A DNA stretch of 64,000 nt from Nageia nagi (taxonomy: Eukaryota > Plantae > Pinophyta). Shown one piece after another: positions 17,511-60,041 of the stretch. Below the pieces are notes generated by a model. It was not told the origin of the DNA, made no database searches, and saw nothing but the letters and a program-made list of their open reading frames with translations. The stretch spans positions 42,532,001 through 42,596,000 of the forward strand of contig JBITNC010000001.1 in NCBI GenBank assembly GCA_050084985.1. Reading direction: 5' to 3'. Position 1 is the stretch's first letter. The number at the start of each line of letters is the position of its first letter. A program made the position numbers and the translations under genes.

Positions 17511-17783
17511 ATGTAAGAATTATGTTTATTTCAATTTATATAAAAATATTTATTTATTTCAAAAAAATATTTTATAAATTTATTGGATCATTTTAATAAT
17601 ATTATTATTTTTTTTTACTTTCTAACGACTATAATTTTATGTAATTAAAAAAATTACTAAAAATTTACATTAAAAAAATTTAAACAAATTAATTGAAATG
17701 TTAAAGGCTTAAAGAATTTTTTTCATTATTTTATTTTTTATAAAAGTATTAAAAATATTTTTTATTTTTTAATTCATAAAAAA

Positions 17784-31499: not shown

Positions 31500-34400
31500 A
31501 TTATTAGGGTTTCTACGTTCATGCTCGTATTGAGAATTAGGTGTTACGTTAAAACAAATACATAGCATCCAAACATCCTTTACATTTAAAAATCAATAAG
31601 TAATAATGTATGCATGAATATTCAAATCTAGCTTGTTTAAAAAATCACACAAGATATTAGAAAGTACTACAATTATCCCATACGCATGGTGCTATGTATT
31701 TAATACTATTTTATAAAATTTCACATGCTAGAGTAACGTGTCTTGAGATGATATTAAAGTCAACTACTTCTAAAAAGGAAATGCATCGTAAAATGGTCCT
31801 CACTCAAGTTATATTCTTTTAGATTGTCATTTATTGAGTAGGAGTTTGACTAATGAATATTTCATATCATTTTCCTTCATCATTGAAACAATCCATAAAT
31901 TCTTTTTTAGTTGATTCTATCATTTTAAAATTTATCTTTTAGCCTGAGTTATTACCAAGCTTATTTTGATCTTGATTGTTAGATCCAGTATTCATTTTAT
32001 AAGGGTTATATGAAGATTTTCTTATCGTTGAATCTATGTGCATTTCTAAGAGTATTATTATTTTTAAGGTTATAGTTATCTTAATGGTAAGTATCACTTA
32101 TTAAAGGGGGATTCAAGTAGATAACATCATATTACTACTAGACTAACCCATTGAGCCTTTTCTTAATAATTAAGGACTCCTAGGGTCATCTCAATTGTTA
32201 TCAACATATTTTTGGTTAAAGAATGTAGGATAATTTTTCTTCTCCTGATTGAGTTGATCTCTATAATATGAATTATACTCTTGTGTTTTCTTCAGAAACA
32301 TTAGGGTTGCCTTAATATAACTAAAATATACTTTTACTTTCCTTCATAATTGAGTTTATTACCATGTGCATTAATACAAAGTACTAAGTTTCTTTCTATG
32401 ATTCATTTACAAGAATCCATGGTTAATAATACCAATTCTTAGTGTTTGATTTATTTTTAACCCATACTTTTATACAATATTATTAAATAGTTTTCTTTAT
32501 ATTAAGACCTTTTTATATTTATATAATGAGTTATATCTTGTGAACATATTAGAACAATAAGATTTATAAATTTATTTTTATGCAAGATAGAAGACTATGA
32601 ATACAAAGTTAAAGATCATAATTTTTTTACATTATATTTACTAATATTATGTAAAGGTACTAAGGTTATCTATTAAAGGCCTTCCTAAGTATAATTCAAT
32701 AACATACATGGTGATTACAAAATTAATTCTTCTTTGATTCTTACCATTGATATCATTTTTTTATCCTTGTATTCATATTATTTTATATTTTCTATTACTT
32801 ATCTTTATGTGGAATTATATTTGGAGTTCTAACCTTACCTTTTTAAGTAACTTCAAATAAAAAACATATCATTAATATAAATAAGTTATAGGTAGTATAT
32901 GATGAAATATCATCAGCTATCATTCTATAAGTGTTGTTACATAATGATAAGAGGATTTTTTTACATTCTTAAATGAAAAAATACATGGTAAACATATAAA
33001 AGCTTGGTCTAAAAGGTCTTCAATGCATCTTCGTCTTCTCGATGTGGTCCTTTCCATTTGTCATCTTTCGAACTTTTCCCAAGGATCCAAAGATTATAAG
33101 ATTGAGTACTATGAGAGGTGTTGAATTCTTGAGGATCAAGATAACTCTTTTCTTATTTATGATCAATATGCAATTGAATTTATCTACGTGATAGTTCATT
33201 TTTTAAAACTCTTTTTTATGGATTTTAGGAGGTTTTATTTCCATTCTAGGACTACCTCTTTTCTTTTGTCATAAGGTACACATGAACTTTATTCGAATAA
33301 TGTTATAGCCACACCACATTAAAATTTATATTTTATCCTTTCATTGCATTCTAGTGATGCTTGATACACACTATTAATTAAATGGTGTTTCATCAGATAA
33401 ATTTGATATCTTTCTCATAACTAATATTAAAATCATAACAACTTTACTATTATACAAAATTAAAGTAACCTAAACTTTACCATGGTATTATATATTGGGT
33501 GTAACAAATATTGAAAGTATTTAGTTAATACCTCTATTCACTCTCATTACATATTAATCATAACATCTAATTTAATTGAATTTAAAATATTTTACTTCAC
33601 ATAAATTTATTTAAAATCTTTTCAATTAAACTTGTAAAGCAATTACTACTTGGCGATTAACCTTGACATTTTGTAAATGGAAAAGGGATTCTTATGGTGG
33701 TTTTCGACTAATACCACTTAAGTTCTATGGACTAAAAATAATTCTTTTGACCATAATCCCTATCATGTATGTTGATGGCCTATGAAGGCTCGGACCAAGT
33801 TGTACAATGAGGGAGCTTCATCGAACTACAAATTAAACCAACTAGACCTTTTATTGTCTAAAAATACCATCTAACTACGCTGATGTGATTTGGTAGAGGT
33901 ATTAAGCTCGAAGGGAAATGTTAGATAAATGAATTTGTGACTTATTTATTTGAAAACCTTTCCCAACACACAGATCTAGAAGTGTACAACATGAAAGAGT
34001 TTATTGAGAAAGGCACCTATATAATACACAATGCTCTAGAGTAAGGAGGCATAAACTATTCTCTTGCCTTATAAATCTCAAAGAAAATATCGTCCAAAAG
34101 ATTTTGTACTCCTATTTACTTGTAAACCACACCTATCCAGAATGAGTGAAATGTAGTGGGGGTTCCTGAGATAGGCATAATACTCTTAGAATATGGAGGT
34201 GCTGCATACTACATTTCTTGTTATTCTTAGGGACTATTATGACCACAAAAAATGTAGAGTGGAAAGCATCTCACAGGAGTGAAGTCCTTGGCAAAACCAT
34301 CAATGATAAGAGAGAGATAGGGATCTTGAATGTGATTGCAGTCAACTTTATGGTCAAACATATTTATAGGAAGAATGGGTGGAATAAGAGACTCAAAATT

Positions 34401-35875
34401 GGTTCACCCTGCAATCCTATAGATTTCATCCATAATCTTCTTATTTTTGAGCCATGAATTAGCATAGATTGATAGAGTACTTTATAGGAGCCTATGATTG
34501 GATAATCCCAAAATCATGTAGCAACGTCATTCCATGGAAGCATATATGCAAGGGAGTGGAGTTGAGGGAGCCTACGAGTGAGGTGAAGTGATATTCGAGG
34601 TCTTGAACAATATAGACTCCCATAACTCATTCTTGGTAGGGACTAGTCTCTTCAGTCAGATATGTAATATGAATATTTTACATAGATCATTTGTGCTCGA
34701 GACCTCCCACCAATATATTTAAAATAATAAACTACTCTCCTTTCTATTTAAAAAGATAAATGGTACCAAGCCATCACATGTCAAATAATCCAAATTACAT
34801 ATCCTTACAATAAAAGCCAGAATAGTATCAATAATTAACTTATTAACATTTTGTAAACCTTTATCAAATAATCCTTTCCATACAACATATTAAATAACAT
34901 CAAATAAATTTATATTTTTAGCTAGACATTTTAGCTTTAATATCTAAAATGCAAAGGAATGCACTTGGGCTTAAGTGAAGGGGGCTTCTTTCTCCACGAG
35001 ACTCTAGGCTAAGTTGAAAAGAAAGGAAAATAATGAGATATGAGGTATTTCTTTCTAAGGTTTCTCTCTTTATTTATAGCTAAGGTGGCTATAATATTTC
35101 CATACAAGTGGCTACTTGTCCCTTTAATAATTTTTGTGGGGAGGATGTAGGTATTTTATTTTATTTTATGTGGTGGGTCTCAATTAAATTTGTTGGAAAG
35201 TTTGGTGTCATAAAATATTTTGGACTCTTTTTATATTAGACTACAAATTGAGTTCAATTATTTCGCACACCTCACACAAAGAAACAAGATAGGTGGGGAT
35301 CCTATCTCAATTATTTTCACAACCTAACAAAATACCTTTGTAACATCCATAACATGACATAGTCCTTTTTAACTTTTTTAAATTTTACCTTATTTCACTA
35401 AAAACTTTTTGTAAAAATTTAAAGTCAAAAGAATGGAATATTCTTTGCCTCTTTCAAAATAAATTTCAAAAATGCATATCAAAGTTTTAACATCTATTTT
35501 TACCTGTGGTGATCTCTTCGTTTTGCAAGTCAATTTTATTAGTTCACACACACACATCCACACATTCATCATCATAATTGATAATCATGCTTAATAATTA
35601 TGTCATGCATCTATATGATTTATGATGGTTATTAGAGTTTGTCAACAAACCAATGCCAATAATTTTCTCACTCTTATTCTTCCGTTTCCATCACCAACTC
35701 ACCTTTGATCCTTTAGATCTTTAATCGAACTTTTCATCTCGATTCAACCTATAACTTGTATTATAAAATCTCGAAGCTAGCATCAAATCGACATAAATAA
35801 TGTATATCTCTACTCAAAATTAGTTCTCATAACATAATTCAAACTTAATGTCATTAAAATCCTTGATGGTGCTCG
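31500..35875 (-). mobile_element. Long gypsy LTR, copy G (5' tip and U5 end missing)
   Basis: Inverted homolog of 35910-36975. TATA 35078-35071, anchors 34780-34762 and 33270-33255. 31500-31860 aligns with 51000-51200 and 55740-55980. 31265-31500 duplicates 34515-34778. Confidence 0.75.
33640..34715 (-). other. LRR-receptor-kinase snippet cassette inside LTR copy G
   Basis: Minus strand: MSYGSL 34630-34613, HDFG 34518-34507, LQGE, VDCNHIQ 34346-34326, IPISL 34324-34310, IIDGFAK, QHLHI, LRVLCLSQ 34189-34166, EIYKA, TLLDL, FLDN 33864-33853, PSLYNL 33813-33796 and LSGI. Confidence 0.7.
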
Positions 35876-35878
35876 AGT

Positions 35879-38800
35879 TGTAACGACCCTCCCAATTTCA
35901 CTGTTAATATTTGAGTATTATCGAGGATTCAAATGAAATTAAGTTTGAATTAAATGCTGTAATGATAAATTTTGAATAGCGATATGCTTTATTTGTGTTG
36001 GTTTGATGCTAGCTTCAAGATTTTTGACACATTTTAGAGGTTAAATCAATATGGAAAGTACATGAAAAGATCCAATGAACTAAGGGTGAATTGGTGATAG
36101 GAACGAAAAGGTAATTATGAGGAAATGATTAGCATTGATTCACTAATAAACCCTAATGATCATCGTAGATCATATAGTTGCATTGCATAATTACAAAGTA
36201 TGATTTTTCGATAATGAATGTGTGGATGTGTGTGTATACTAATAACTTTACCATACAAGATGAAGGGATCATCACAAGTAAAATGAGTGTTAAAACCTTG
36301 CAATATATTTTCGAAACTATTTCGAAAAAGGCAAAGAATATTCCCTTATTTTGAATTTGAACTTTTACTTATGGTTGTTGATAAAATGAGATGAAATTTA
36401 AAAAAATAATAGTTGGAAAAGACTAATGTCACTTTGTGGATGTTATAAGATATTTTGATGGTTTATGAAAATAATTGAGATTTGGCCTTACTTATTTTGT
36501 TTCTTTGTGTTAGGTGTGGAAAATAATTGGCTTTAATTTGTCAATTAATATAAAAAAGATTCAAAGCATTTAATGTCACTACACTTATCAACAACTTTAA
36601 TGATACCTACCACAAAAATTATTAAATGGATGAGTAGATATTTATTTCGACATATTTGGACCTCCTTGGCTATAAATAAGAGGATGGAACATTAGAAAAT
36701 ATAACTAATATCATCTCATTATTTGGAGTTACGTAAAGAAGAGAAGCCTTCTATCAAGTCCAGATGCATTCCTTTGCATTGTAGATATTTAAGCTAAAAT
36801 GCTAGTTAAAGATGAAGATTTATTTGGTGTTATTTGTATGTTCTATGAAAGGATTATTTGATAAAAATTTATGAAATATTAATAGGTGAATTGTTGATAA
36901 TGACCTTGTTTAATTGGAAAGGACATACTTTTTGTTTGATTTGACATATTGCATGTGATGGTTTGGTACCTTGTCTTTTTAGAAGTATGAAGTGTAGTTT
37001 ATAATTTTCTTTTTCATTTTAGTTAATGGTTAGGTAAAATATGGATCCTTTGATTTTATTTGGAATGTTATGAGAAAAAAGTTGTATATGAAAGGTATAT
37101 GAATATATTTGTTGAAGATTCATGAGATTATTTTACTTGATAGATATACGTGAAATATGTGCTCTTACTTGAAAGAAGAAGTAATTTAAGAATTTTCATT
37201 TCAAGATTGTTGGAAATGAGTACAATGATTGAATGATATATATATATATATATATTGGTTGAAAAGACAAGTCTTTATGCGCCCCATGCTGTTTTCATGA
37301 GAGTCTATTTTGTGAATAATGTGAGTTTAGCTCTTACTACTCTTGAATGCCCTTCCCTTCAATAATATTTTAATGTCAATCAGTAGTGCTTGAATTAACA
37401 TAGTAAAAAATATGGTAAATCTATTATATACTCGCTTCTCTCCCCATGATGTGCTGTCATTATAGCTTTAACAACCTGCAAATGAAATGCCATTCAAGTT
37501 TGATTCCATTTAGTTTTGCTCAGGAAACAGTAAAGCCAAGGAAGGGAGGTGAGAACTCACAATCCTTCTTATCTATATACGTATTTGGATGTTCAAAGTG
37601 ATTAAATATGATCTACTCTGTGATAGTATATCTCGTTTTCCATTTTTATTTATAGGTCGAATATAGTCTATCCTGTGCATATCCTCATGGATATGAAACC
37701 ATTCGAACAAATATCGTCTCTTCTCTATGAAGCTTCTCGTGCCTTGGGAGATATGTATTTCTTGATGCTGTTAATAAACCTCCTTTCCTCTGTTTTTCTA
37801 TTCTTGTTAACGACTCTAAGAAGCATGCGATCCCTTCTCCTTTTTCTCTACATTCTCTTTAAAGGGTTGCACCATTGGAAACTATATAAAAACCATCCAA
37901 GTTGTATTAATAGAGTCTATATTACCAAACAATAATTGGATTTAATAGATCTATGATGTTGGATCTCCATTGCAGATGAAGCTTCAGCGTTGAAGGTCTC
38001 TCTACCATATTTCTAGCCTAAAATGGACTCGCTAGTCAAGTGCTACTCTTGTAATGGATAAGAATACTACGAGATAAATGTTTTAAGAATTAACTTCACC
38101 TCTATCCAAAATGAGACCTCTCAACATTCCCTTGCGTCGACCATGGTCTCACGCACATTACTCATGGTTTGCTTTAGTAAAATATTAGTTGATTTTTGGT
38201 ATATTCCACCTTCAATGTTGTATACCATATTGAAGCGTAAATTTAATTTTGTATTGTCTTAATATAAAGTAATATGATGCTTAATCTCCTTTATATTATT
38301 AGACTATAATTGTAGTGACAAAGAAATAATAATTAATAATATAATATAGTGTGAATTTATTTCGAGTAAGATTATCTTACTTTAATAAATGATGAAGTTG
38401 TTGTTAAAAGATTGTTGAAGATTATGTAACATCATTTAATGCATAAGAAGTTTTTCAAGCATTTCTAGAGTGAATTCGAACTCAATCATATTTAAGGATG
38501 AATTGCGAATGTTGTAGTTCATGTGACCAAGGAAGGGAGGACTTAAAAACCTCCTGAGGTTCATAGAATGAGTTTTAAGAATTAGATGCCATATAGTTAA
38601 TTATATTTGCATTATGGTCGTAAATAAGACGAGGGTTTTCCTGATCCTCGAACTCCTAACCTTTCCTAGTACTTGATCCACCCACCATTATTCGTTGGGA
38701 GAAGTTCAAAGATGAAGATGGAAAGAGCTACACCAAAGAACGAAGTTGTATTTGAAATCAAGTTTGAATTCGTTACCATGTAATTATTAGCTTAAATTTG

Positions 38801-38975
38801 TAAAGGGATGCTTATTAAATAATTAGGATTACCTTCTTTTATTATCCTTGTGTAATAACTTTGTATTAACAATTGATGGAATTTTCATGTAATATTTTAG
38901 ATTTTACTTTAATGAGTATTTATTCTAATTTGTGCTTATATAGGTTCTTAGAAAATAATTTAGATTCCCTACAAG
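35879..38975 (+). mobile_element. Long gypsy LTR, copy D (3' end uncertain)
   Basis: Starts TGTAACGACCC at 35879. TATAAATA 36671-36678, anchor CATGTGATGGTTTGGTACC 36952-36970 and anchor GACCAAGGAAGGGAGG 38525-38540. Confidence 0.75.
37020..38300 (+). other. PPR-snippet cassette inside LTR copy D
   Basis: WNVM, YVLL, YGKSI, NEMPFK 37481-37498, SFAQE, ALGDMY 37741-37758, LKGC, NGLASQ 38022-38039, FTSI, TFPCV 38124-38138 and TMVS 38140-38151. Confidence 0.8.
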
Positions 38976-39447
38976 GTAATTATTGAATGGTATTCGAGGT
39001 GTCTTTTTTAAATCAAATAATACTTTGCATAAAAGAAGTGTAATCCCTAACTTAAACTTCTATCATGATAATGAAGAGAATAATACCATTACCTAGATTG
39101 GTTCAAATATAAAGAATTAAATCACATTTAGAAGAAAATTCTTTTTTTATGATTATCTCTTTCAACCCTAAAGATTATGAATTTCAAATTATGAGATTGT
39201 AGGTTACTTACCTCAGGTATGTAGGCTCTTAGAGACTCTTCTTGACTTCTAGTTGGATGATTACTTCATGTACATTGAAATCGGTTGTGGTTAATGGTTA
39301 TATTTGGCAAAGTAGTGAGTGTCAAACTAGATCTTTCTTACTTCACAAATATGTAAAAAGTTCTCATCTCTATTGTATCTGTTTGGAGGAGAACTCTCTT
39401 ATTTTTCTCTTCTTCTTCTCTCTTACTCACTCTATCTCAATATTGCA

Positions 39448-45865: not shown

Positions 45866-47059
45866 TGTAACGACCTCGTTGCACCCTTAAATTTGAATTT
45901 ATGAAATAAATCCTTAAAAACTCATTATGGTTCGAAGTTCATCTAATAATTTAAAATGTAAATAAGATCGTGGGATGATTAATGATACTTCATCTATTAC
46001 AAATTGATGCTGGTTTTGAGATTTTGTATAACACAAGTAATAGTTTGATCTAGCGAAATAACATGGAGGAATATCCTAGGGACCCAAGATAAGTGGTTAT
46101 GGAAACGAAGTGGTAAAAATGAAAAAATGATTAGCATTGAATTGCTGATAGACTCATAAGGAACCCTCATAAATCATATAGATGCATGTTAAAAATATAT
46201 TTTCAATAATTTCTCTGTGTGCGGGTGTGTATGTGCACTAAAAAATTTATCTTGCAAAATGAATGGATCGTCACAGGTAAAAATGTTTGTTAAACAGTTG
46301 ATGTCATTTTCGAAATTTATTGACTAACTAAAGGAATATTTTATTTATTTAAATTCAAATTTTAACTAGGAATACTAGTGAAAATTAGTAAAAATTAAAA
46401 AAAAACTTAAGGGTAAAAGGATCATCTATCTTTTATTAATAATTATAAGATTATTTTGACACCTTCCAAAAAAAATTGAGTTATCTTCCCCACACAAATT
46501 TTTATTTTATGGTAGGTGCAAATGATTTGATACAAAGTTTTTGTTCTTTTGTGAAATATGTGCAATCATTTTTGGAAGGTATAGGGTAAAGCCCCTTTAA
46601 AAAAATACAATAAAAAAAATCTCCACCCTACGCATGAAGTGATGGGATGGAAAAATAATGCTTTCCTTGGAAGGATTATATTATATTTTATTTATAAATA
46701 TTGAGGAATCGTAAGGGAATGGATATACATCTTCTCTTGATTCTCTCTTCCCAAGGGCCTTGGTCTAGAGTCCCTTGGAGAGAAAATCCTCCCCTCTCAA
46801 ATCCAAGTGTTTTTTTTTGCATTTTTGATAATGTCTAGTTGAAATATGAATTTATTTGATATTATTTAGTATGTTTTGAAGAAAAAAATGCTTGATGAAG
46901 GTTTATGAATAAATACTAAAGGAATTAATTGCTAACATTATTATTATACTTGTTTAAGAAATATTTTATTATTTTATTTGATAGTTTTGCATGTGAGGAT
47001 TTGTACCTCTTGTCTTGGAAGCGGGTAAAGTTTCTTATATTAAATTTGAAATCTGTTAG

Positions 47060-48900
47060 GAAGGGAAAGAGCAAAGTACCATTCCATATGGCATATTATA
47101 TTTTATTTATTTGAAGAGATGTGTCTTAAACATCCTTCCGTCTTGAAGGCTCATAGGAGGACATTTTAGGAAGTGTTCTAGATTATTCATTGATCCACCT
47201 AAGTATAGTCTATTCTATGACTTTAAATATCATTTCCATGCTCGCGTAATCTTTTATGGACCTGAAAACTAGTAAATTAGATGATGCCTCACCTCTATGA
47301 TTGACCTGGGAAGTTCTCGTAGGATTGGATTGTTTACATCTTTTCTAGAGTCATCATTGTAACACCCTTTTGAGAGCATACTATCCAGGTCCTCTCTCTC
47401 AAGTTCCCATCGTAGCATTGCTAAAGTAATGTTACCAAAGGTCCTTTATCTCTACACTTGAAGTCCATGACCTAGCATAGTTTATGTTGGAGAAATACTG
47501 GCCAAGGTTTAAGAGTTTGACTTTACCCTCAACAACGGAACTATCTGCCCTTTCTTTCAGAGCACCCATTATAGCACCATATCAGAAGAATACGAGCAAG
47601 GATCATAATTTTTAACTAATCTTGAAGTATAACATTCACATATTCTCCTTAGATTCTGTATCGAGGCACATGATGGAAGATTTCTGGTATAGGTCATAGA
47701 GTTTGATCTTATAATCACGTCTGCTCCACAACCTTCAACATAGCGTATATTGGGAAATATTGGAAATGATTGCTGAGTCTACCTTTACACTTGAAATGGT
47801 GCTCCCACTGTAGGACATTTGGGAAGAACACTAGCAAAGGTCGTAGAGTTTAGCTTTGGTGGCCATTTTGATAAAAAATGCTCGTAAAAGTTGCAGAGTT
47901 TGGTTTTGCACTTAAATATCTCGTAGCCTTTTAGAAAACCTAATTTATGCATATCCGATTATGATTGGGTCTGCACATTCCTTTTTCATTTTTTTATGGA
48001 TCATATGATGGCCAATTTTGGGAAGGATGGTTGTAGAGGTAGCAAAGTTTGGCTTTTCACTTGATAACTATAGATGCTTAATGTATCCATACCCTTTTTA
48101 CGCATATCTCGCCAATATTGCACCATCCAAGACTACATCTCGATGAGGTAAATTGATAATGGATTTTCATCATATTCCATGCTAGAAAAATGCTGGCCAA
48201 GATCATAGAGTTTGGCTTTATACCCAACTGCTATGCCTGATTCAAATCTATCCAATCCCCATCTTAGTACAAGTTGAAATAATTCTGGTAAAGATCGCAA
48301 AGAGTGGTTTTAACATTGCATTTGTTCTCTAACCATCCATGCCATCTTCTAGTTTTCTATCATAGCCCATAATGGAAGTATGGTGACAAAGGTTGCAAGG
48401 TTTAGTTTTACTCTTTTAATGTTCATGCCTCCATCTATAGTCCCCTTCGTAGCACAAGCTAAAGATCACAGAGTTGGGTGCTACACCATCTTATGCACTC
48501 TATTTTGTGCAAAGTCTGAAACCCTTCATAGGATCTTTCCAACGTATTGCAAGTGAAGTCATAAAAAGAACAAAATATTACGCAATCTCAACGTAACATC
48601 CATTGCGTCCACTTGATGATTCTTTGGACTACGATTGAATAAGTTAATTTTCCAACTAGGCCATTTATTCCTTTTCCTCGTATCTATCTCGAGAGAAGCA
48701 TTTTAATTAATTAGTAGACCATATAAACTATCGAAAAGTGTCCTACGAAGCATTTGATTTGGATTAGTTTGGTTTTGAAAAGATAACTTAAATTTATTTT
48801 CATATTTCAAGTGGTCTATTGAAATTTTAATGGATAAATGGTATTGAGCTTGGATTGTAATGAGAGATTCATAATATATGACTTGTAATCGATTGCATAC
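47060..48900 (+). other. PPR-snippet cassette inside LTR copy H, split by an insertion at 47358-48485
   Basis: LFEEM 47107-47121, SVLKA 47137-47151, ARVIF 47240-47254, KLDDA 47274-47288 and TSMI; after the insertion ILWTTI 48619-48636, REAF and EAFDL. Confidence 0.75.
47358..48485. mobile_element. Solo-LTR-like insertion with degenerate internal repeats
   Basis: Termini TGTAACACCC...GGGTGCTACA are mutually inverted. About 9 copies of an AAG(G/A)TC(A/G)(T/C)AGAGTTTG-like motif. Flanks TCAT/CCAT. Confidence 0.65.
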
Positions 48901-50280
48901 ATATATAAAGAACAAAATCTCTACCTTATGTGTGTAATACATTTATAAGAAATGATGGATTTTGCTTGGTAACCATATGCTTAAGTATAGAACTATTTAA
49001 TTGTGGAATAATATACACTAAAAAATAAAACTAGTGAATAGTACATCCATAACTTGAAGATAATCTAGAGATAATGTAATTTTATGCTAGAAGTTCTTGA
49101 TTATTTTGATGAGATCCAGTATATGGTCTAGGAAGGGAGGTAGCTTCACCAAAGACATAAAACCTCTTGAGACCATAAGTTGAGTAAAAATCTAAGTAGG
49201 TGGTATGTCAAATGGATGAATGAAGGTATACATATAATGCATTAGGGTTTAAAAAGAAGAGCTATCCTGATCCTCATATGCTCATAAATCATTCTTAGTA
49301 CCTATGACCACTCACTCATGGGAGGCCTTGAAGGGTTCGTAAAAGGAAGATTGCACGAAAGAAGATGGAGACTCCTTCCTACTTTCAAACCCATTTCTTA
49401 AAGAGTATACAAAAAGATGTAATTGATCTATTTGATATTATTTGATATAACAATATTATAAGGGGTTAGCAAGAGGAAAAGCTAACAACCATTCCAAGTG
49501 TTATGATCATTATATACCTAATATCAATATATAGGATTTGGAAAGCATTTTTGAAATGAACAAAGAGTATTGAAGTAAAGGATTATGCTCATATATAGTT
49601 GGAGATATTTATAACGTACCTAATTGAATGGTCAATATAGCATAATAAAACAATCTAAACAAAGTTTATTCCTATTATTATACCTTTGAATTCATTGATG
49701 GTTTTATAGATTATTGGAAAGTTAATAGGATGTGAACTTGATAATATATGCAAGACCTATCTCTATCATATGTTAGGTTTTTAAATAATTATGCAAGGAT
49801 CTTAATATACTTATGGATGAATTTATCACTTAACTAAGTATTGTTAATGGAATGAGTTTATATGGTATGCATCAACCCTTAACTACAAATTGATAGGAAT
49901 TTTTTTGAAAATTAAGTTCTTTAAACTTAGATTTAAATTCTTGACTTGAGAAGTGGTTCCAACAATTATCTATTGAAACTTAGGATACAAATATAAGCAT
50001 TTCAAAATGTAGTTAAGAAAGATAATTGTAAGAATTTTAGATTGGGAATTCGACCTAATGTCAAAGCTACTAATCAAGTTAGAATGAAAGGATTCTTGAA
50101 ATTTAAGCTTATGTCATCGTGATAGTAAAGGCCTCACTTGAATAAAATTAGAGCACATTCATCATGGAAAACCGCATGCAAGTGAGGTGGGTTTGCATGG
50201 TGAATGTGCGCTAATACTTACCTAAGGGAGGTAGTATCTAGGTAAAGTATGAAAAAACATCATCATATAATCTATGTTTT

Positions 50281-51200
50281 GACTTATTCCCAACATCCAA
50301 AACCTTAAAATTTCAGACCTAATTTTTTTTGGATTAGTTTAAACACTCGAATGATCTAGGGATGGAACAAATGATCCACATGAGCATATCAATATTGCTA
50401 GCTAGTCAGCACTCAAATGGCAAGATTGGCTAAAATTCGGATTAAGAAATCTTGATCAATCTCTTCTGGTGTTCACTCTCAAATGCTCATCCTGTTGAGG
50501 AGATGCCTTCTACATAACCCTAACATTTCCACTCCTCAAACTATGTAACAAATATTTTGGTCATGGTGTAATGGTTTCTTACTTGGGCCCATATCACTTG
50601 AGAGAATGTAGATCCACTAGACTACATAACCTTTCACATAAGTAGATATTTTGTCCTAAGCAAACTTCCTTGTGAGAGGGTAAACATCATTCTTATGGAA
50701 TAGTCTTCATACTTCTATATGCTAAAATGCAAGTCATATGATTACTAAATTATTCTCATCTAGTAATCGTAGTTTTATCAATTGTTATCCTCATCTGACA
50801 TCTTGTCAAGGATATGAGACACTAACTTGCCTATATCTATCGCTTAAGCTTACCATGGGGTTTGGTATTCTTGTTCTCATATCTTGGGAAGCCATGGGCA
50901 TTGAAGCAATACCCTCAATTGGTTTGTAGAGTCTAATAAATATTAAGCAAGATTATAAGATAAAACCACCCTATATCCTATCGAACCATTAATTGATCAT
51001 GAATCAATTATTAGGGTTTCTACATTCATGCTTATATCGAGCATTAGGTGTTACCTTAAACAAATTACACAACATCAAAATATTTTCTATATTTAAAAAC
51101 CAATAAGTAATAACGTATGCAAGAAGATTCAAATCCAACTTGTTTAAGAAGTCACACAAGATATTAGAACGTACCATAATTATCCCTTTATGCATAGTGC
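50281..51200 (-). mobile_element. Distal (U5) remnant of the 3' LTR of the gypsy element
   Basis: 50281-50950 aligns in direct orientation with 54895-55570. It is joined directly to integrase sequence, implying a large deletion. Confidence 0.7.
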
Positions 51201-53450
51201 TGCGTATATAATATTGCGAGGATACAGATATCCACCTAGATGTTGATGTTCTGCTTTAACTTTTTTACATTCCAAGCATTTTTCCACAAACTCTGTTATA
51301 TCTTTCTTCATTCCATCCTAATAGAATTTTTATTTCAAGTCTTCTCTCATCTTTATTCCTTGTAGGAGTAAATTTCTTAAATCTCCTTTTTTGGGATGAT
51401 TAATCTATCTCAAAAATATAAAATTCCATCTTTTTCAGAAAAGTCTTGAGATGAAGGATTACCTTTATCATTTTCTCGATGGATTTGCAGTACGAATCCT
51501 TTAGTTGCGAGATTCTCACTTGATCAAACAAGTCAAACTGCCTTCTTGTCATGGTATTTACATGTCTTCTCCGACTTAATGCATCTACCACTTTATTTTC
51601 TTTACCCTTGATATACTCAATGCTAAAATCATATTTGGAGAGGAATTCCATCCATCACCTTTGTCTAGCATTTAATTTGGGTTGAGTGAACAAGTACTTC
51701 AAACTTTGATGATCGGTTTCCAATTTGAAAGGTTTTCCTAGCAAGTAATGCCTCCACATCTTGAGTGCGTGCACTATAGCTGCTAACTCAAGATCATGTT
51801 TAGCATAATTCAACTCATGTGGCTTTAACTTTTTGGATTCATATGCTACGGGATTTTCATTTTGTGATAGCACTCCATCCAAACCCTTTAATGACGTATT
51901 TGTACACACTACAAAGTCCCCGTGTGGGTTAGGGATAGTGGGAACTAGTGTGGATGTAAGTTTTTCTTTCAGAGTTACGAAAGCATTTTTGCACTTCTTA
52001 GCCCACTTAAACACTTTGTTTTTCTTCTACAGATTGGTGATAGGATTTGCTATCTTTGAAAAATCCTTAACAAATCTTCTATAATATCCAGCTAATCCCA
52101 TGAAACTTCTTAGCTCAGTCACATTTGTTGGTGTAGGCCAATTCAATATTGCTTCTACCTTTTTAGGATCAATTGAGATTCCTTCAGCAAAAATAATGTG
52201 ACCTAAGTACTGAATGTGAAACATAAAAATCACATTTAGATAATTTACCATATAGCTGATGTCATCTCAAAACCTCTAAGGCTAATCTCAAATGATATTT
52301 ATGCTCCTTCTCATTCCTTGAGTATATGAGAATATCATCTAGAAAGATTAGCACAAATTTGTCTAAGTATTCTCGGTAAATATTATTCATCAGATTCATG
52401 AATGATGCAGGAGCATTCATGAATCCAAATGGTAAGACCACAAACTCATACGTCCATATTGAATCTTGAATGCTATCTTATGGGTATCTAATTCTTTTAT
52501 CCTTAACTAATGATATCCTGACCTTAGATCTATCTTGAAAAAGATAGCAGTATCTTAGAGCTAGTCGAACAAGTCATCAATCCTAGATAGAGGATACCCT
52601 TTTTTGATGATGACCTTGTTCAACATCCTGTAGTCAATACACAATCTCAATGTTCCATCCTTTTTGACAAACAATATAGGAGCTACCCAGGGTGATACAT
52701 TAGGCTTTATCAACCCTTTCTCCAAAAGATCTTGTAACTGCACTTTTAACTCCTGCATGTCAATGGTGTGCATTCTATAGGGGGTTCTAGAGATAGGTTC
52801 AACTATTGACACTAGATCTATTGAGAAGTTAAATTCTGTTTTTGGGGGTAGACCTGGTAGTTCCTTGGCAAATACATCCTTATATTCTCTCAACACAGGA
52901 TACTTGTTTAATATTTATATGTCTTTATCCTCTTCTTTCACTTTTTTGACCTTAACTGCAAAGATCATTTCCCTTTTTCTAATACTTCTTCTCATTTGCA
53001 TGGCTGTGATCAAGTAGGGTTCAAATGGTCCTTGATCACTAAACACCCTATATTGATTTTGGGATAAATCAGTGTATTCCACCCATCTCTCCTAGAAGTC
53101 GATCAAGGCCTTATATGCCATTAACCAATCCATTCCTAGGATAATATCATAGGAAGCTAAGGGAACCGCATACAATTCCCACATAATAAATCCCTTAGGT
53201 AACTCAATCTCAACATTCCTAAAATATTATTTGATAGAACACTTTATTAGACCCAAACTCTATTTGCCATCCATTTGTCAAAAATTTTGATGCCTTAATC
53301 ATTTCTTTAACTAAAAAATTTGAAATGAAACTGTCCATTGCATCATAATCTATCAAAACTTTAAAAGATTTACCAGAAAGTTTACCCAAGATCTGGAGAG
53401 TTGTAGGTTTTCCTTGAGCTTGCCCTGATCCAGTTGCTACAAAACTTCTA
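51200..53450 (-). pseudogene. pol: Ty3/gypsy pol (protease, RT, RNase H, start of integrase), chromovirus/Tekay-like
   Basis: [14 protein letters not shown]...[83 protein letters not shown] and CLECKKVKAEHQ. Confidence 0.95.
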
Positions 53451-54770
53451 TGATCATTAGGTGGGTCTATCTTAAGAGGGCATTGACTTGCATAATGCGC
53501 TCCACCATAATTGCAACATCCATCACACGGATCTGTCTTTTGCTATGAGTTGTTATTCTTAGGCACATACTAATTATTTCTTTATTCAGAGAGTCCTTTG
53601 TTCGGGTTCCTAAATCCTTGATTTTCATTCCCATGATTCTGATTCTGGCTTCTAAATTGCTGATTCTTCTTCTAGAAACCCTTCTTTTTGAAACCCTTGT
53701 TCCCAGGTCGTTTCTTCTCAAATCTAGGAAATTTCCATCTTTACGATTATGATTGACCTTTCTATTGCTATTGTGCGGAGCCTGTTTCTTAGCACCTCTA
53801 TTCTTTCAAAAATATTCCTTGCCTTTTTCATCCAAGAAATAGTTCATAAAGGTTTTTGTAATGCCCAAGTTATTTTTAGCTCCCTTGGCCAGATCATAAG
53901 CTTGTTCCAATGTCTTAGGTTTAGGATGTTGACCATAGTCTTGATTTTGGAATCAAACCCTACCAGGAATCTATGAACCTTCAGATGATTTTTGTCATAT
54001 GGAACGTACTTAAGATGTTTGACAAACCTCGAATGATAGCTTTGCACACTCATGGAGCCTTGTTGAAGTGTAATATTCTTCATATTTCTTGTCGAAATAA
54101 ATTGAAGGAATAAATCTTTTCTAGAATGCTTCCACAAATTTTGGCCACTTCAACTATTAAACTCCATGCTCAACTTTGTAGGCATTCCACCATTTGAGAG
54201 AAATATCTTGAAATTTGTAGGTAGCCCACATGGTCTTGGTTTTTGGCGATAGATTTTTCATTGAGAAGTATGTTTCGGTCTCCTCTATCCACACTTTTGC
54301 ATGCTTACCTTCATGCTTTCCATTAAACATGGGTATCTTGGCCTTTGTCAGATCAGCTACAAGTTCTTGTTTGATCCTTTCCTAAATCTGGTTGTTCAAT
54401 CCACTTGATCTTGCTTGTGCTAGGACTTGATCAGATTCTTGTCTTGGAAGATCAACTTGCTGACTCAACAGATTTTTTATTAGTTCTTATTGCTCTGCCA
54501 CCTCCTCTTGGAGTCTTGTGATGGCTTCTTCTCCATTTTTCTTATTAGAATGGCTAGAAGAATTCTTAGTATTATTTGTGGGAACCTATCGATTGACATT
54601 CCTCATTATTCCTCTTCAAGAGTTTTTCCTCCTAACATTTATATTTCGACCCCTAACATTTCTTTGGTTTTTGGCATTAGCATTCACAAGAAGGCTATAT
54701 ATGACACTTTGTCAAAGGTTTCCTAAAGCTCTGGTTACATGTCTTGGGGTGCCATAATATGAGTCAACCA
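53450..54770 (-). pseudogene. gag: Ty3/gypsy gag, decayed
   Basis: LQQGSMSVQSYHSRF...VHRFLVGF and zinc-knuckle remnant CCNYGGAHYASQCP. Confidence 0.75.
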
Positions 54771-54868
54771 AATGGTATTGTTATTAGGCTCATGCATACT
54801 CATATGGACTTCCTAAACTTTTATAGCAAAAGAGTCATGGACCATAGGCCCAAGGGTTTGAACTTGAT

Positions 54869-54880
54869 GCTCTGATTCCA
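54869..54880 (-). promoter_or_regulatory. Primer-binding site (tRNA-iMet type)
   Basis: Minus strand TGGAATCAGAGC (one mismatch to TGGTATCAGAGC), 1 nt after the LTR end ...CATTACA. Confidence 0.8.
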
Positions 54881-54881
54881 A

Positions 54882-57800
54882 TGTAATGCAACCACTTATT
54901 CTCATCAACCAAAACCCTAAATTTCAGATCTATTTTTTTTAAATTAGTTTAACATTTGAATGATCTAGGAATGAACCGGGCGATCCCACATGAGTTTAAT
55001 AATGTTGCTAGCTATTTCAACACTCACATGGCAAGATTGGTCAAGAACTCGGGGTAACCAACCCTAATAAAATTTCTTGGTGTTCACTCCTCAACACTCA
55101 CCCTGTTGAGAAGACGCCTCAAAAGTCACCTCACCATTCCTATTCCATGTCTTGTGTGCAATAGGCTTTCTGGTAATGGCGTAGTGGTTTTCTACTCGGG
55201 GCCCATACCACTTGAGAGATCGCACTTCCACTAAGTTAACATCAATACCTGATGATAACTCTCCATATCATAGGAGCAAATAGCTTATCGTAGGCAAGCT
55301 TCCATATGACTGGGTAGTGTTGGCTATGGAACAATCATCATACCCCTATCTGCTAACGACAAGTGGTATGACTACTAGTTACCCTCACCCGGTAATAGTA
55401 GTTTTTTCGATTTCTATCCCCACTTGACACACTTGTGGGAGGATATGGATCCTAGCCTGCCCATAACTATCGTCTAGGCCCAACATGGGTCCAGCATCCC
55501 TTGCCCATAACTTGGAGAGCCATGGATATTAAACAATATCCTCAAATGGTTGTTTAGTCTAACTTATTATTAATTGTGTTGACGAACAAAATCACCCATG
55601 ATCTAAAAATGATCAAATATGATTTCAATCAAGGATAATGGTACAAGACACCATGCATAATAATTAACTTTAAGACACTTGACATATGAGCTGAGTTCTA
55701 ACCTCAGTTTAGCACTATTCATCTTTGCTTATGAGGCATACATGGGAAGTCTTGGTTATAGGCTTGCTTAAGAAGTCACGTAATTTTATTTATCCCATAC
55801 ACATTGTATCATGTATATGGGTCTACATTTTAAGAGTCCTCATGCATACGTAAAGTAACAAGTCGTGAGGTAGGGTCCTTGTCGCTATTGTTACAAAGGT
55901 AATGTGGCACGAAGTGGTCCTTATGCAAGGAATATTCTTTTTGTTTGTCATCTAGCAGTGTAGGTTTACTTGGCGAAGGTTCTCCACCGTTTTTCTTGCA
56001 TTATTATATCCATGCCAAAAGTTCTTTTGGGTTGGAATATTCTTTCAAAATTCTTCGTGGTCCTTAGCCAATATACGGTGTAATCTAAGTTAGGTTTTAT
56101 TTCTTTAACTATGATTATTGCCTTATTATTTTAAAACTCCCAAACTTTTCCAAAAAGGATCCTAAATAATCCCATTTATTCCCATTGAGTCCCATTTGTA
56201 CCCATTTTGATTTCGAGAGTCCTTAAAGTTTCCCAAGTGCTTCCAAATTGTCTTTTGGAACTCTAATTTGAATTTAGGATTGTTTCTAATTCATTGAGTT
56301 AATTTTGGGTTTATTGAACTTTTCTATCTCTATACTTGCCACTATTACTAACATATAATTAATAACTTACCTATTAAGAACCAATATATTTGATCACAAC
56401 AAACCTTTTCCTTTGATCAAGTCTAGTTCTAAGCGAAGAAGCATAAAGCATTTAGTTTCATGCTATTTACTTCAAAGAAATACAAGGCTTCATAATTTTT
56501 ATCGACCCTTATCAATTTGTAATCCCATTTCATGTAAAAACAAATATCAATTTCTACTCCTAGTCATGTAATCATTATTAGTCATAACATTAAACAAGTA
56601 TAATGCCATTTGCAATAAAGAGGAAGCTAATTCAAGTACAATACTAATAATTTACATACTAAAACTGAGTCATTGAAGTATAAACGCATCTATGTTTCAA
56701 GGTATACAAAATGAAACAATCTCTTTATATATATCTATGTTAATACAATAATCTTGATCAATTACAAAAAGGTTAAATATACATTCGTCTATATCTAAGT
56801 TAATGATATTTACAAAGCTTCCATACTCTAATTACAAATGATTACAAAGGATCATAATACATCATTACTTGTAAAATAAATGTAATACAGTAAAGCACAT
56901 CATATCATCTCAATAGCTTAGTACGTCATCTTATTGTGAAACACCTCCATCGATCTTCGAGCATCAAGCACCTTCATAGACCTTTGGTGTGTGGTCGAGT
57001 ACTAGGAGGGAGGAGGATCAAGACACCCCTTTTTAATTGACCATGATACAAAAAAATTACATGATTTCTAACTCTTAGACCTTAGAAGGATTTTAGGTCC
57101 TTTTCAAACTACCTCCTTTCCTTGGTCGTATATTTAATAATCCATCTTATATGAAGTCGATAACTAACATTAATCCATTTTGACTATTAATCCATTATGT
57201 TATTGCCTACTATGATCGTGCATACCATGACAATCATACTTGATATCTTTAAATTTTATTAGACATAATAACCAAGTAATTAATACAAGACTCAAGTCGA
57301 CATCAAATTAGTTGAGGATGCAAATTCTCATTATTACCACATTAATTAATCAGTCCATTAAGTTTTAGAAAGCTAATATTCTATTTCATATATGCAAGCC
57401 TAAGAAATTTGTCTATTAATATCTTAGATTACCTTCCTTATTACAACCTTCTTTAATCAACATTAAATCCTTCATTCCCTTAAACTTTCTCTCTCCATTA
57501 CTTGTTTTAGCATAGATAAACTTAATAAAGTATCTACCATAATCTATTGTGTCCTCAAGTCAGCGTTTTAAACTTATTTACCTGTGAATGCTTTCACGTT
57601 AATAAATCATACAATATATTTAAAAGCACCTTCATGGTCGCTTATTGGACTTTACTGCCTTCAATACTATCAAAACTGTGGTGATTCTACAAGTACGAAC
57701 TATGTTCTAGAATAAACATTTTTTTTTATATAAAAGAATGGATTCTGTCTCAATTTCAATTTCAAGGTTCTGTTGCACAGCGTGAAGGAGTTCAAGCAAA

Positions 57801-60041
57801 ATATGTGAAGTGATATAATTGTATAAGGCTACGTTGGCAGAATAACTCGACGCTTCTTATACCAAGATGTAATTTACTCCAATTATGTTTTATTTGGATT
57901 ATTCTGCTGTTCGAGGGAACCATACAGAGCCGACTACTCAGGGCGCCTTCCAAAATTACAATTTCATTTGTGAGGGGTTCATGCTAAATGAGGGAGAGCA
58001 TCAATAGATGTAACGCCTTCCAGCAGATCATTCAAAGCCAGTGTTTATAGATTTCTAATACTATACGCCCTCGAAGGAGTTCGCAGAGGAAAGTAGTAAC
58101 ATATCTCAGAGATATGTTTCAGATCTATAGACGCAGTGGAAGAACTCATGATATGGAAGACTCACAGGACCTTCATAAGGGCGCGTCTCCATATTTAATC
58201 AATCTCTGAAACTTCAATCTACAGCCTTCCATAGAGGCTCAGAGAAAACTAGAATAGGAAGGTGATAAGAAACTATGGTTCTGCAATGCACATAAATTTG
58301 GAGAATTTGATTAATGGCGAGGTATAGTTGTGGTAAGCGGAAGGTCGAATCCTACGCCCAACCCTCTTTCAGCAAGGCTATCGTGAGAGGAGATCAGATC
58401 CGCCATGAAAACAATAGGAATATAGTATAAAAACAATAGAAGCCAAGAGAAGGAATGATAACTAAGAGTAACAGATGATATCACGTGTGAATTCTTAAGA
58501 GATTCAGACAAAAATAAAAAAGAAGTAGAAACATCCGTGAGCCATGGTGATTAGTAAAATATTAAATCTTTCATGCTTTTTCGATGTACAAACCCAAAAG
58601 TAGGTAAGAAAAACAATAATTATTTTAGCCCTTTAGTTAAAGAATATTGTATCATTCCAATTTCAAAACAAATAACAACTTTCCAAATCAAGAGTAGACA
58701 AGAGTTAAATAGGGGCACCTTGCTTAAAGAAGGGAAAGAGAGAGAACTCTACTATTTCACGAGCTCCAAAATGAGAAGAGATAGCTTAATTATTTAGTGA
58801 TGGCTTATTTTTTTAGTAGTAGAAATTATGTGATTAGTCCCATCAAAATATGATAAAATACTTTTGTAGAAGAAAAATAATAAAAGAAAATTTCAATCAT
58901 TTACTTTTTAAAGAAAGGACATGGTATTAACCTTTACATACAATATATCAAACCATTATGTCTCTTCAAATAGTAAAAGATCTTTAACAACAATTAATTC
59001 TATGAAATTTTATCAAATATTATTTTCATACAACTCATCAAATACATCATAATAGGACTACTTTAACTAGGTATTAAAAAAAATAATGCATTTTAATTTA
59101 AAGAGATAAAAAAAACTTCATTTCTTCACATAACTTTACACTCAAGTTTGAGAATAATAAGAATGAAATAATAAGAGATAGGTAGGTTTCTCCTAATGTT
59201 CTACTCTTTTATTTATAACCAAGGAGGTTCATGTGTGTCCAAATGAACGTTTTCTCATACTTTTAATAATTTTTGGGGTAGTTTTGTTTAAAGTTGATAA
59301 TTGAAATGATATTAAAAACTTTGGAACTTTTTTATTAATTGACAAATTAATGCTAACTATTATCCATACCTAATATAAGAAAATAAAACTAAGTAAAGTC
59401 ATTACTTCATTATTTTTCTACCCATTAAATATCTTGTAATACCACAAGGTGACCTTAGTATTTTTTCTAATAGTGTTTTTACTATTAGCTCCATGTGGCA
59501 ATAGTATGGGCATTCATTTTAAATTTTTACCTCATTAAATTTATTTTTTCTAACCATTTGTAAATTTTTAAATTTAAGGAAGGTATACTTCTTTTTTTCC
59601 TTCCAATTCAAATTCGAATTTCAAAAACACAAAACAAAGGAGACACACCTTTATCTGTGACGTGCCTTATCTTGTAGAGTAAGATTTATCCACACATTTT
59701 TGTAAACATATTTTCAACAAGAAATCAGATAATCATAACAATTATTCTACATGCAACTACATGACTTATGATGGTCATAGGGTGTGTTAGCGAATCAACG
59801 TTAATCATTTCCTCCTTACCCTTCTGTTCCCGTTACCAATTCACTTTTGGTCTTTAGGATCATTGGATCATTTTTTTTCTTGTGACCTGTGTCAAAATAT
59901 CTTGAAGCTAGCATTAAATTATCACAAATGATACATATTCCCTTATTAAACTTATCATTACCATAGCATTATTCAAACATAATCCATTCAAAACCTCGAT
60001 GTTACTCGAAGTCAAATAGTGTTTTGAGGTGGGTCATGATA
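54882..60041 (-). mobile_element. Apparently complete ~5.1-kb 5' LTR, copy E, attached via the PBS to the gypsy gag-pol
   Basis: Minus-strand start TATCATGACCC (decayed TG) at 60041 and end CATTACA at 54882. TATA 59217-59210, anchors 58941-58923 and 57127-57112. Segments align with copies D, G and H. Confidence 0.7.
57550..58700 (-). other. PPR-snippet cassette inside LTR copy E
   Basis: Minus strand: LITM, MADLI, LQIYVHC, TIVSY, LIKYG 58202-58188, TTFLC, ICWKAL 58028-58011, VVGS, GSLE 57921-57910, LFCQ, SLIQL 57830-57816, TCRI and VLKA. Confidence 0.75.

What the first reader, a model, noticed from the sequence alone, without database searches (positions are those of the whole stretch)
33255..60041. 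Gypsy LTR family with a fixed slot holding a variable cassette of host-gene snippets
Seen: four copies of one long LTR (G 31500-35875 minus, D 35879- plus, H 45866- plus, E 60041-54882 minus) align from the TG start through the TATA box to a CATGTGA..GTACC-like anchor. They then become unalignable for ~1-1.8 kb and realign at a GACCAAGGAAGGGAGG-like anchor. The intervening DNA differs in each copy. In every case it is a chain of 12-30-nt pieces reading as motifs of one host multigene family, all sense to LTR transcription, in scrambled order and frame. Copy E is joined by a PBS to a gypsy gag-pol and copy H follows a PPT, so the slot is inside a true LTR, ~350-500 nt downstream of the TATA. 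Established: PPR and LRR-kinase families are major phasiRNA sources and targets; TAS1/TAS2 and miR7122-triggered TAS-like RNAs silence PPRs; Pack-MULEs and Helitrons capture much longer fragments. Inference: the retroelement builds and exchanges spacer-like libraries of host sequence in its transcribed leader. These could seed trans-acting siRNAs against host families, soak up host siRNAs, or shield the element from silencing. I do not know of a described equivalent, but cannot search the literature.
Basis: partly seen in the sequence, partly recalled or inferred. Interest (0 to 1): 0.95.

Follow-up and report, generated by a model that had tools for sequence, protein, structure and literature searches.

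The report
Variable LTR middle, one backwards PPR array
Four old copies of a very long plant retrotransposon LTR do share a fixed stretch whose content differs in every copy. It is not a library of short host-gene snippets: one copy, plus relatives elsewhere, holds a decayed, backwards, tandemly amplified piece of a PPR gene, and the other three hold nothing recognisable.

Summary
The anatomy is confirmed. G, D, H and E are related Ty3/gypsy LTRs with a PPT, a tRNA-iMet PBS and gag-RT-RNaseH. They align through a TATA block to anchor 1, become unalignable for 1.5-2.2 kb, and realign at anchor 2. They are only 68-77% identical, so they are old sublineages, not copies of one LTR. Public DNA runs show the flanks at 250-3900x summed depth and E's slot at 0-33x, so the variability is family-wide.

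The snippet reading fails. Peptide words shared with 150 real PPR proteins are not enriched in sense frames (z -0.9 to 0.7).

One real signal remains, and it is antisense. H's slot is an array of at least 9 decayed units reading KPNSxTFxSxLP backwards. A related LTR (L069) carries seven 84-93-nt PPR S-motif units there, with a 107-aa ORF (Pfam PPR, 1.5e-24). L019 carries a third antisense tract. D, E and G show nothing.

Best reading: a hypervariable LTR middle, plus an old capture of a PPR fragment that became a minisatellite. No function is shown. Earlier notes of this scan report antisense PPR cargo in other LTR families of this genome.

The parts
54882..60041 (-). LTR copy E, the 5' LTR of a truncated Ty3/gypsy element
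   Evidence: It aligns to D and G at its 5' end. It ends ..TTACA before the PBS. Its conserved blocks are highly repeated in DNA runs.
57128..58928 (-). Slot of E: 1.8 kb, low-copy, with no recognisable origin
   Evidence: Unalignable to the other slots and to the E-like relative L028. Summed depth is 0-33 against hundreds to thousands on the flanks. No PPR signal on either strand.
54869..54880 (-). Primer binding site, tRNA-iMet type (TGGAATCAGAGC)
   Evidence: sequence
51655..54137 (-). Decayed gag, RT and RNaseH of the E element; no integrase found
   Evidence: Pfam: Retrotrans_gag, RVT_1 and RT_RNaseH
50282..51213 (-). LTR 3'-end fragment J, 83% like the end of G and 70% like the end of E
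45866..50281 (+). LTR copy H, a 3' LTR preceded by a PPT at 45852-45865; its 3' end was not recognised
46906..49124 (+). Slot of H
   Evidence: It lies between anchor 1 (about 46990-47010) and anchor 2 (49125-49140).
47481..48520 (-). PPR-motif-derived degenerate tandem array, antisense to the LTR, with at least 9 units
   Evidence: nhmmer finds units at E 1e-8 to 1e-13. A tblastn cluster of 17 HSPs covers 47614-48160 on the minus strand. Antisense 5-mer z is 3.1 to 4.1. Antisense peptides include KLNSTTFASVLPKC.
35879..39400 (+). LTR copy D; it starts TGTAACGACC and its 3' limit is uncertain
37009..38524 (+). Slot of D, with no detectable host-gene content; 111 nt are shared with the D-like relative L019
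31496..35875 (-). LTR copy G, lacking about 30 nt at its 5' end and abutting D head to head
33237..34720 (-). Slot of G, with no PPR, LRR or kinase signal; its last 290 nt or so are shared with relative L019
36665..36679 (+). Conserved TATA block CTTGGCTATAAATAA in D; its counterparts end at 59223 in E and 35084 in G, both on the minus strand
38525..38540 (+). Anchor 2, GACCAAGGAAGGGAGG, in D; also at 57112-57127 (minus strand) in E and 49125-49140 in H
   Evidence: 4 matches against 0.11 expected by chance.

Best explanation
The 'slot' is the hypervariable middle of the roughly 5-kb LTR of an old, very abundant Ty3/gypsy family. The ends of the LTR, a TATA block, anchor 2 and the last 700 nt are kept. 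The 1.3-2.2 kb between anchors 1 and 2 turns over quickly, so sublineages about 30% diverged share nothing there.

In one lineage (H, L069 and the D-like L019 copy), part of the slot descends from a fragment of a PLS/SS-class, At4g02750-like PPR gene. It entered the LTR in antisense orientation, probably by a reverse-transcription template-switch accident or a nested insertion in a master copy. Single motif-sized units were then amplified in tandem. L069 has 84-93-nt S-motif units. H has units of about 50-160 nt built on the start of the L motif. Both arrays have since decayed.

Shown: the anatomy, the family-wide variability, the PPR origin, the orientation, and the tandem structure.
Inferred: the capture mechanism, a single origin for the PPR fragment, and the absence of function.
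For: - LTR hallmarks and coding order.
- Copies are 68-77% identical with colinear anchors.
- Slots are unalignable.
- Depth is 0-33 in the slot against 250-3900 in the flanks.
- Six further LTR copies from metagenome contigs have the same anchors and different slots.
- L069:8677-9000(-) scores 1.5e-24 against Pfam PPR.
- L069 has seven tandem units.
- The alignment to real PPR proteins runs on into the H-type unit.
- The H-type unit is present in L069 and L019b.
- tblastn clusters occur only antisense in H, L069 and L019, with a clean reversed-sequence control.
- 5-mer test.
- Window-wide scan.
Against: - PPR signal in H is weak per hit (best tblastn E 0.009 among 150 related queries). Pfam sees nothing in H's fragments.
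- No donor gene was found. The best short relatives are 30-45% identical.
- The content of the D, E and G slots is unexplained.
- Other LTR families of this genome are noted to carry antisense PPR cargo. That pattern is odd if capture is purely accidental.
- The real transcription start of the LTR is unknown.
Confidence: 0.68

Rival explanations
1. The element actively builds and exchanges spacer-like libraries of 12-30-nt sense snippets of host PPR/LRR-kinase genes in its transcribed leader, in order to seed, soak up or evade small RNAs.
For: A position-fixed variable region lies downstream of a conserved TATA block. PPR-derived sequence exists in some slots.
Against: - Sense frames show no PPR word excess (z -0.9 to 0.7).
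- The real PPR tracts are antisense. They are tandem duplicates of one unit, related by descent between copies.
- Three of the four window slots, and L028, L056 and L095, have no signal.
- No LRR or Pkinase was found.
- About 4% of random 5-aa words already match the PPR set, so 37-69 apparent 'motifs' per slot are expected by chance.
Confidence: 0.04
2. All slots began as antisense PPR cassettes, with different PPR fragments taken up in different sublineages at one preferred LTR position. D, E and G have simply decayed or been overwritten beyond detection.
For: - Three independent LTR copies have antisense PPR at the same position.
- Different PPR genes would be mutually unalignable.
- Unchecked first-reader notes describe position-fixed, always-antisense PPR cassettes in other LTR families of this genome.
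Against: - H is as diverged as D, E and G, yet is still detected. D, E and G give z 0.0, -2.4 and 0.6 in antisense frames and no HSP at E<=1.
- H, L069 and L019b share the same unit, so they reflect one capture, not three.
Confidence: 0.15
3. The PPR array is not cargo of the LTR. It is a separate PPR-carrying DNA transposon (CACTA/Pack-type) nested in an ancestral LTR, as was found elsewhere in this genome.
For: An earlier follow-up note (s1-844042) reports such a CACTA element inside another LTR element. The slots are where foreign DNA accumulates.
Against: - No CACTA/TAGTG termini with matching TIRs or a 3-bp duplication flank the arrays in H or L069.
- The tract lies in the slot of three diverged LTR copies, between the same two anchors. 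It therefore travelled with the LTR, however it first entered.
Confidence: 0.1

Closest known systems
Gene-fragment capture by plant LTR retrotransposons (rice/sorghum survey PMC3726574; maize, bioRxiv 10.1101/777037; review PMC13317346)
   Same: Host coding sequence lies inside the element's boundaries and is propagated with it. PPR, LRR and kinase domains are among the domains most often seen in captured genes (PMC3726574). Abnormal template switching is known to put foreign sequence into LTRs, as in BARE-2 and Veju (PMC13317346).
   Different: Here the fragment sits in the LTR itself, not the internal region. It is antisense, reduced to one or two PPR motifs, and amplified into a tandem array. 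No donor gene was identified.
Tandem repeats in hypervariable non-coding parts of Ty3/gypsy elements that seed satellites (Ogre/Tat; PMC7004042)
   Same: Short tandem arrays arise and vary between copies inside non-coding retroelement sequence.
   Different: Those arrays lie mostly in the region between pol and the 3' LTR and are not gene-derived. Here the units derive from PPR motifs and lie within the LTR.
U3 variability between retrotransposon subfamilies (Tnt1A/B/C; from my own knowledge, not checked here)
   Same: Conserved element ends with a sharply variable LTR segment that defines subfamilies.
   Different: The Tnt1 variable boxes lie upstream of the TATA box and are about 100 nt long. 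Here the variable segment is 1.3-2.2 kb and lies downstream of the conserved TATA block.
TAS / PPR-phasiRNA loci (TAS1/TAS2, miR7122-triggered)
   Same: Non-coding RNA with sequence related to PPR genes.
   Different: No miRNA trigger site, phasing or small-RNA data are available. The PPR class here is the PLS/SS editing type, not the P-class RFL targets. The sequence is far too diverged from any known PPR (30-49% aa identity) for siRNA-level complementarity to be assumed.

Membership tests
Ty3/gypsy LTR retrotransposon | Direct long terminal repeats ending TG..CA | tested here: met
   TGTAACGACC starts at 35879 and 45866. E ends ..TTACA at 54882. No intact 5'/3' LTR pair is present in the window.
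Ty3/gypsy LTR retrotransposon | PBS after the 5' LTR and PPT before the 3' LTR | tested here: met
   PBS TGGAATCAGAGC at 54869-54880. PPT AAGAGGGGGAG before 45866, also present in two further copies.
Ty3/gypsy LTR retrotransposon | Gene order gag-PR-RT-RNaseH-INT | tested here: inconclusive
   gag, RVT_1 and RT_RNaseH are found in that order. No integrase or chromodomain was found in the window or in L019. The lineage (Tekay or other) is not resolved.
Host-gene fragment captured by an LTR retrotransposon | A segment with significant homology to a host protein family inside the element's boundaries | tested here: met
   L069:8677-9000(-) scores 1.5e-24 against Pfam PPR, between LTR anchors. H 47614-48160(-) gives a weak tblastn cluster plus motif peptides.
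Host-gene fragment captured by an LTR retrotransposon | The same fragment is carried by several copies, so it moved with the element | tested here: met
   The H-type unit is shared by H, L069 and L019b, in the slot and antisense each time.
Host-gene fragment captured by an LTR retrotransposon | An identifiable donor gene | tested here: not met
   The best matches are 30-49% identical at the aa level. The host gene set is not available.
   5-aa word test against 150 PPR proteins: sense z -0.5, -0.9, 0.5 and 0.7 for G, D, H and E. The host CDS itself was not testable.
   Slots of related copies share segments by descent: G with L019a, D with L019b, H with L069, and L069 with L070 and L095.
TAS-like / phasiRNA-generating locus | A miRNA trigger site and phased 21-nt siRNAs | not testable with these tools
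   No small-RNA or degradome data are available. Run X1 is only guessed to be RNA.
Nested PPR-carrying CACTA transposon | CACTA..TAGTG terminal inverted repeats with a 3-bp target duplication around the PPR tract | tested here: not met
   No qualifying pair was found in H, L069, D, E or G. Decay could hide them.
Retroelement-borne minisatellite | Head-to-tail units inside non-coding element sequence, with copy number varying between copies | tested here: met
   H has at least 9-11 units, L069 has 7 S-units plus 1 H-type unit, and L019b has 2.

The most novel reading that the evidence does not exclude
Antisense PPR-motif arrays at a fixed position in the presumed transcribed leader of LTRs are favoured rather than accidental. 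Several unrelated LTR families of this conifer-type genome carry them (this gypsy family, plus the copia and other families noted in earlier windows). LTR transcripts would then supply antisense RNA to the large PLS-class PPR family, either feeding siRNAs against PPR genes or shielding the element.
Probability: 0.08. Interest if true: 0.75.

Novelty: new variant of a known kind. Interest (0 to 1): 0.38.

Why it matters
The finding shows how to separate a real signal from motif over-reading. About 4% of random 5-residue words match a PPR set, so any AT-rich kilobase 'reads' as PPR snippets.

What remains is a clean example of two known processes combined. A host PPR fragment lodged inside an LTR, backwards, and was turned into a minisatellite. 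Different sublineages amplified different motifs.

Together with the other notes from this genome, it makes one question testable: are antisense PPR tracts in LTRs over-represented, and do they make small RNAs? If the answer is no, this is ordinary junk turnover in a giga-genome that removes old repeats slowly.

Tried and rejected
- **Rfam on the window:** nothing.
- **TRF:** missed the H array because its units are under 70% alike.
- **Pfam on stop-to-stop pieces of the four slots:** 109 sense and 111 antisense pieces gave no PPR, LRR or Pkinase. Pfam is also blind to fragments that are visibly PPR-like, so these negatives are weak.
- **Profile HMMs built from real PPR segments:** not more sensitive on stop-split pieces.
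- **Peptide-level comparison between slots:** noise only.
- **Palindrome 39948-44251 as coding sequence:** no Pfam hits.
- **Nested-CACTA explanation:** no TIRs or TSD.
- **Donor search:** no close PPR relative.
- **Species identification:** not achieved; the runs are coded.
- **LRR-kinase claim for G:** tested only with Pfam, because no LRR-RLK protein set could be fetched from window-derived queries.

The HMMs were used only as search profiles for non-coding repeat units.
Full report
**Setting**

The window is AT-rich (about 30% GC) and is a nest of old repeats with no intact gene.

- H is a 3' LTR. The polypurine tract AAGAGGGGGAG directly precedes TGTAACGACC at 45866. Two more copies of that junction lie at 61654 (+) and 62863 (-).
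- E is a 5' LTR. It ends ..TTACA at 54882. It is followed by TGGAATCAGAGC, which matches the tRNA-iMet primer site at 11 of 12 positions, and then by decayed gag, RVT_1 and RT_RNaseH on the minus strand.
- No integrase was found, so I call the family Ty3/gypsy and leave the lineage open.

**The observation**

The four copies are not copies of one LTR. Where they align they are only 68-77% identical:

| Pair | Identity | Aligned length |
|---|---|---|
| G-D | 71.5% | 1172 nt |
| G-H | 70.5% | 437 nt |
| G-E | 68.5% | 302 nt |
| D-H | 68.1% | 420 nt |
| D-E | 72-77% | 283 and 280 nt |

(All.)

All four share the CTTGGCTATAAATAA block and about 300 nt after it, up to a GCATGTGA..GGTACC-like anchor. 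They realign colinearly at GACCAAGGAAGGGAGG, which has 4 matches in the window against 0.11 expected by chance. A TCCTGATCCTC..TAGTAC block follows.

Between the anchors lie 1484 nt (G), 1516 nt (D), 2219 nt (H) and 1801 nt (E). These do not align with each other by word-7 blastn, nor as translated pieces.

The variability is a property of the whole family. Contigs of two public DNA runs were laid on E at 80% likeness or better.

- The conserved blocks reach summed depths of 250-3900.
- Positions 57118-58837 reach only 0-33.
- A second low stretch lies at 56258-56945.

So the anatomical observation is real and more than chance.

**More copies**

A scan of metagenome contigs for the anchor-2 16-mer listed 120 loci. 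Six of them are plant LTR relatives.

- L028 is E-like: 73-80% identical on both sides. Yet its 1288-nt slot shares nothing with E's slot.
- L069 holds a whole LTR, about 5.6 kb.
- L019 holds parts of two LTRs.

Slots of related copies do share pieces by descent:

- G with L019a, about 290 nt.
- D with L019b, 111 nt.
- L069 with L070 and L095, next to anchor 2.

**Testing the snippet reading**

Pfam finds no PPR, LRR or Pkinase in 109 sense and 111 antisense stop-to-stop pieces of the four slots. I later found that Pfam is also blind to visibly PPR-like decayed fragments. I therefore built a better test.

A 107-aa ORF in L069's slot turned out to be a genuine PPR (Pfam PF01535, 1.5e-24, three repeats). 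I used it to fetch 150 real PLS/SS-class PPR proteins.

*Peptide-word test.* I counted 5-residue words shared with this set in the three frames of each strand and compared the count with 100 dinucleotide shuffles.

| Slot | Sense z | Antisense z |
|---|---|---|
| G | -0.5 | 0.6 |
| D | -0.9 | 0.0 |
| H | 0.5 | 3.1 |
| E | 0.7 | -2.4 |
| L069 | 0.5 | 6.5 |
| L019b | -1.1 | 1.8 |

About 4% of words match by chance. That gives 37-69 'PPR-like' 15-nt pieces per slot with no biology behind them, which is enough to explain what an unaided reader sees.

*tblastn.* I ran the 150 proteins against the window and the six loci, with reversed sequences as a control.

| Target | HSPs | Best E | Strand |
|---|---|---|---|
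| L069 8563-9397 | 2144 | E <= 1e-5 for 1657 of them | - |
| L019 1685-1984 | 34 | 8.8e-5 | + |
| Window 47614-48160 (H slot) | 17 | 0.009 | - |
| Window 19075-19306 (outside the finding) | 23 | 0.002 | + |
| Reversed control | largest cluster 3 | 0.065 | |

A sliding 5-mer scan of all 64 kb singles out the same two window places for PPR-like content. One further window, over the gag coding region (53251-54750, minus strand), also reaches z 3.0.

**What the PPR tracts are**

In all three LTR copies the PPR reading is antisense to the LTR. H's LTR is + and its PPR reading is -. L069's LTR is + and its PPR reading is -. In L019 the LTR is - and the PPR reading is +.

- **L069** carries seven head-to-tail units of 84-93 nt (nhmmer E 1e-19 to 1e-26). 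Each encodes a 31-aa S-type motif (..RRAYELFDRIPHQNVVSWTTMIIGY..). They are much more alike than neighbouring motifs of a real PPR protein, so one motif was amplified after capture. The alignment to real PPR proteins runs on past the S units into the next motif.
- **H.** That next motif is, at the DNA level, the unit repeated in H (E about 1e-13).
  - H holds at least 9-11 such units between 47481 and 48520, spaced 52-185 nt apart.
  - Read backwards they give KLNSTTFASVLPKC, AKPNSATFTSI, EKPNFATSTTILPKIG, LGIKPNSMILASI and VKLNLATFVTILP.
  - This is the G-x-KPN-x-x-TF-x-SVL-x-AC start of the PLS-class L motif.
  - A loose pattern for it occurs three times in H antisense and nowhere else in six frames of the window, the loci or the reversed controls.
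  - Remnants of the S unit lie between H's units.

The irregular spacing and the descent relation show minisatellites built from one captured fragment. They are not colinear gene wrecks, and they are not scrambled snippets.

No CACTA-type termini or target duplications flank the arrays. No close donor gene was found: short relatives are 30-45% identical, and the two that carry a name are from Cryptomeria (At4g02750-like) and Taxus.

**Explanation**

The slot is the fast-evolving middle of a long LTR whose ends and a few internal blocks are constrained. One lineage picked up a PPR fragment backwards and turned it into tandem arrays. The other lineages hold low-copy sequence of unknown origin.

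Capture of foreign sequence into LTRs by aberrant template switching is known. So is capture of PPR, LRR and kinase fragments by LTR elements (PMC13317346, PMC3726574). Tandem arrays in variable non-coding parts of gypsy elements are also known (PMC7004042).

Whether the TATA block is the promoter, and so whether the slot is transcribed as leader, is inference only. It would imply an R-U5 of about 4.3 kb, which is unusual. A contig of run X1 matches 57686-58076 at 99.5%, but X1 is only guessed to be RNA.

**Relation to earlier notes of this scan**

Other windows of this genome carry notes of antisense PPR cargo in LTRs of a copia family and of other families. Two follow-ups call the cargo real but functionless. 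One case was resolved as a nested CACTA element.

I did not test those loci. They raise the modest possibility that antisense PPR in LTRs is favoured in this genome, which I rate at about 0.08.

**Verdict**

It is wrong on orientation, grain, generality and mechanism, and its function is unsupported.

Noticed in passing
window 34721-37008, 39948-44251, 60612-63940: Three large imperfect palindromes with arms 70-72% identical. The first is LTRs G and D lying head to head. The third is two copies of (internal 3' end + PPT + first ~600 nt of an LTR) converging on about 62276. The middle one is non-coding. Contig L019 also joins two LTR parts in inverted orientation. The cause is unknown.
   Followed up: partly
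window 19075-19400 (+), weaker at 7811-8123 (-): A decayed PLS-class PPR fragment inside the 2.3-kb repeat pair A/B (7269-9299 and 17782-19918). Pieces read ..ISWNSMIIDMYTKFGNV.., ..FDKMLHKDTIKFIGYGQNG.. and ..FVTNVLIDM... tblastn gives 23 HSPs (best E 0.002) and the 5-mer z is 4.4. A/B lack obvious TG..CA ends, so their type and orientation are unresolved.
   Followed up: partly
window 9305-14732: A Ty1/copia element (zf-CCHC, gag_pre-integrs, RVT_2) with LTRs 9305-9807 and 14224-14732 that are only 84% identical. Its PBS is TGGTATCGGAGC at 9810. It is inserted into repeat A.
   Followed up: partly
window 31284-31499 and 34561-34776: A 216-nt direct duplication (89% identical). A copy of anchor 1 plus the first ~160 nt of G's slot reappears exactly where LTR G breaks off at 31500.
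   Followed up: no
window 56258-56945: A second low-copy stretch inside LTR E (summed depth 1.6-78 against 245-857 beside it). The 'slot' is therefore not the only variable part of the LTR.
   Followed up: no
window 58187-58393: A 207-nt module inside E's slot recurs in the DNA runs at about 85% identity. The contigs carrying it differ on both sides, so it is a moderately repeated piece in other contexts.
   Followed up: no
window 57341-58841: CpG observed/expected is 0.6-0.8 in E's slot, against 0-0.6 in the 5' part of the same LTR. The core of the slot is also GC-richer (about 34-42%). This fits the sibling note on CpG retention. The cause is unknown.
   Followed up: partly
window 14890-15130: A tandem repeat of about 45 nt (..ACCAAAATAC..TAAGTTCATGAAATT..), 5-6 units long, at the end of repeat A.
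   Followed up: no
window 39453-39913; L069 12671-13194: This stretch, about 3.6-4.0 kb into D, matches in reverse the sequence ~600 nt beyond the end of the LTR in L069. A second TATA-like block (TTGGCCTATAAATAGAAG) sits at about 39661. D is probably truncated near 39400 and joined to another fragment.
   Followed up: no
window 50282-51213: The E element lacks integrase and most of a 3' LTR. After RNaseH it runs straight into an LTR-end fragment that resembles G's end (83%) more than E's own end (70%). This suggests deletion or recombination between elements.
   Followed up: partly
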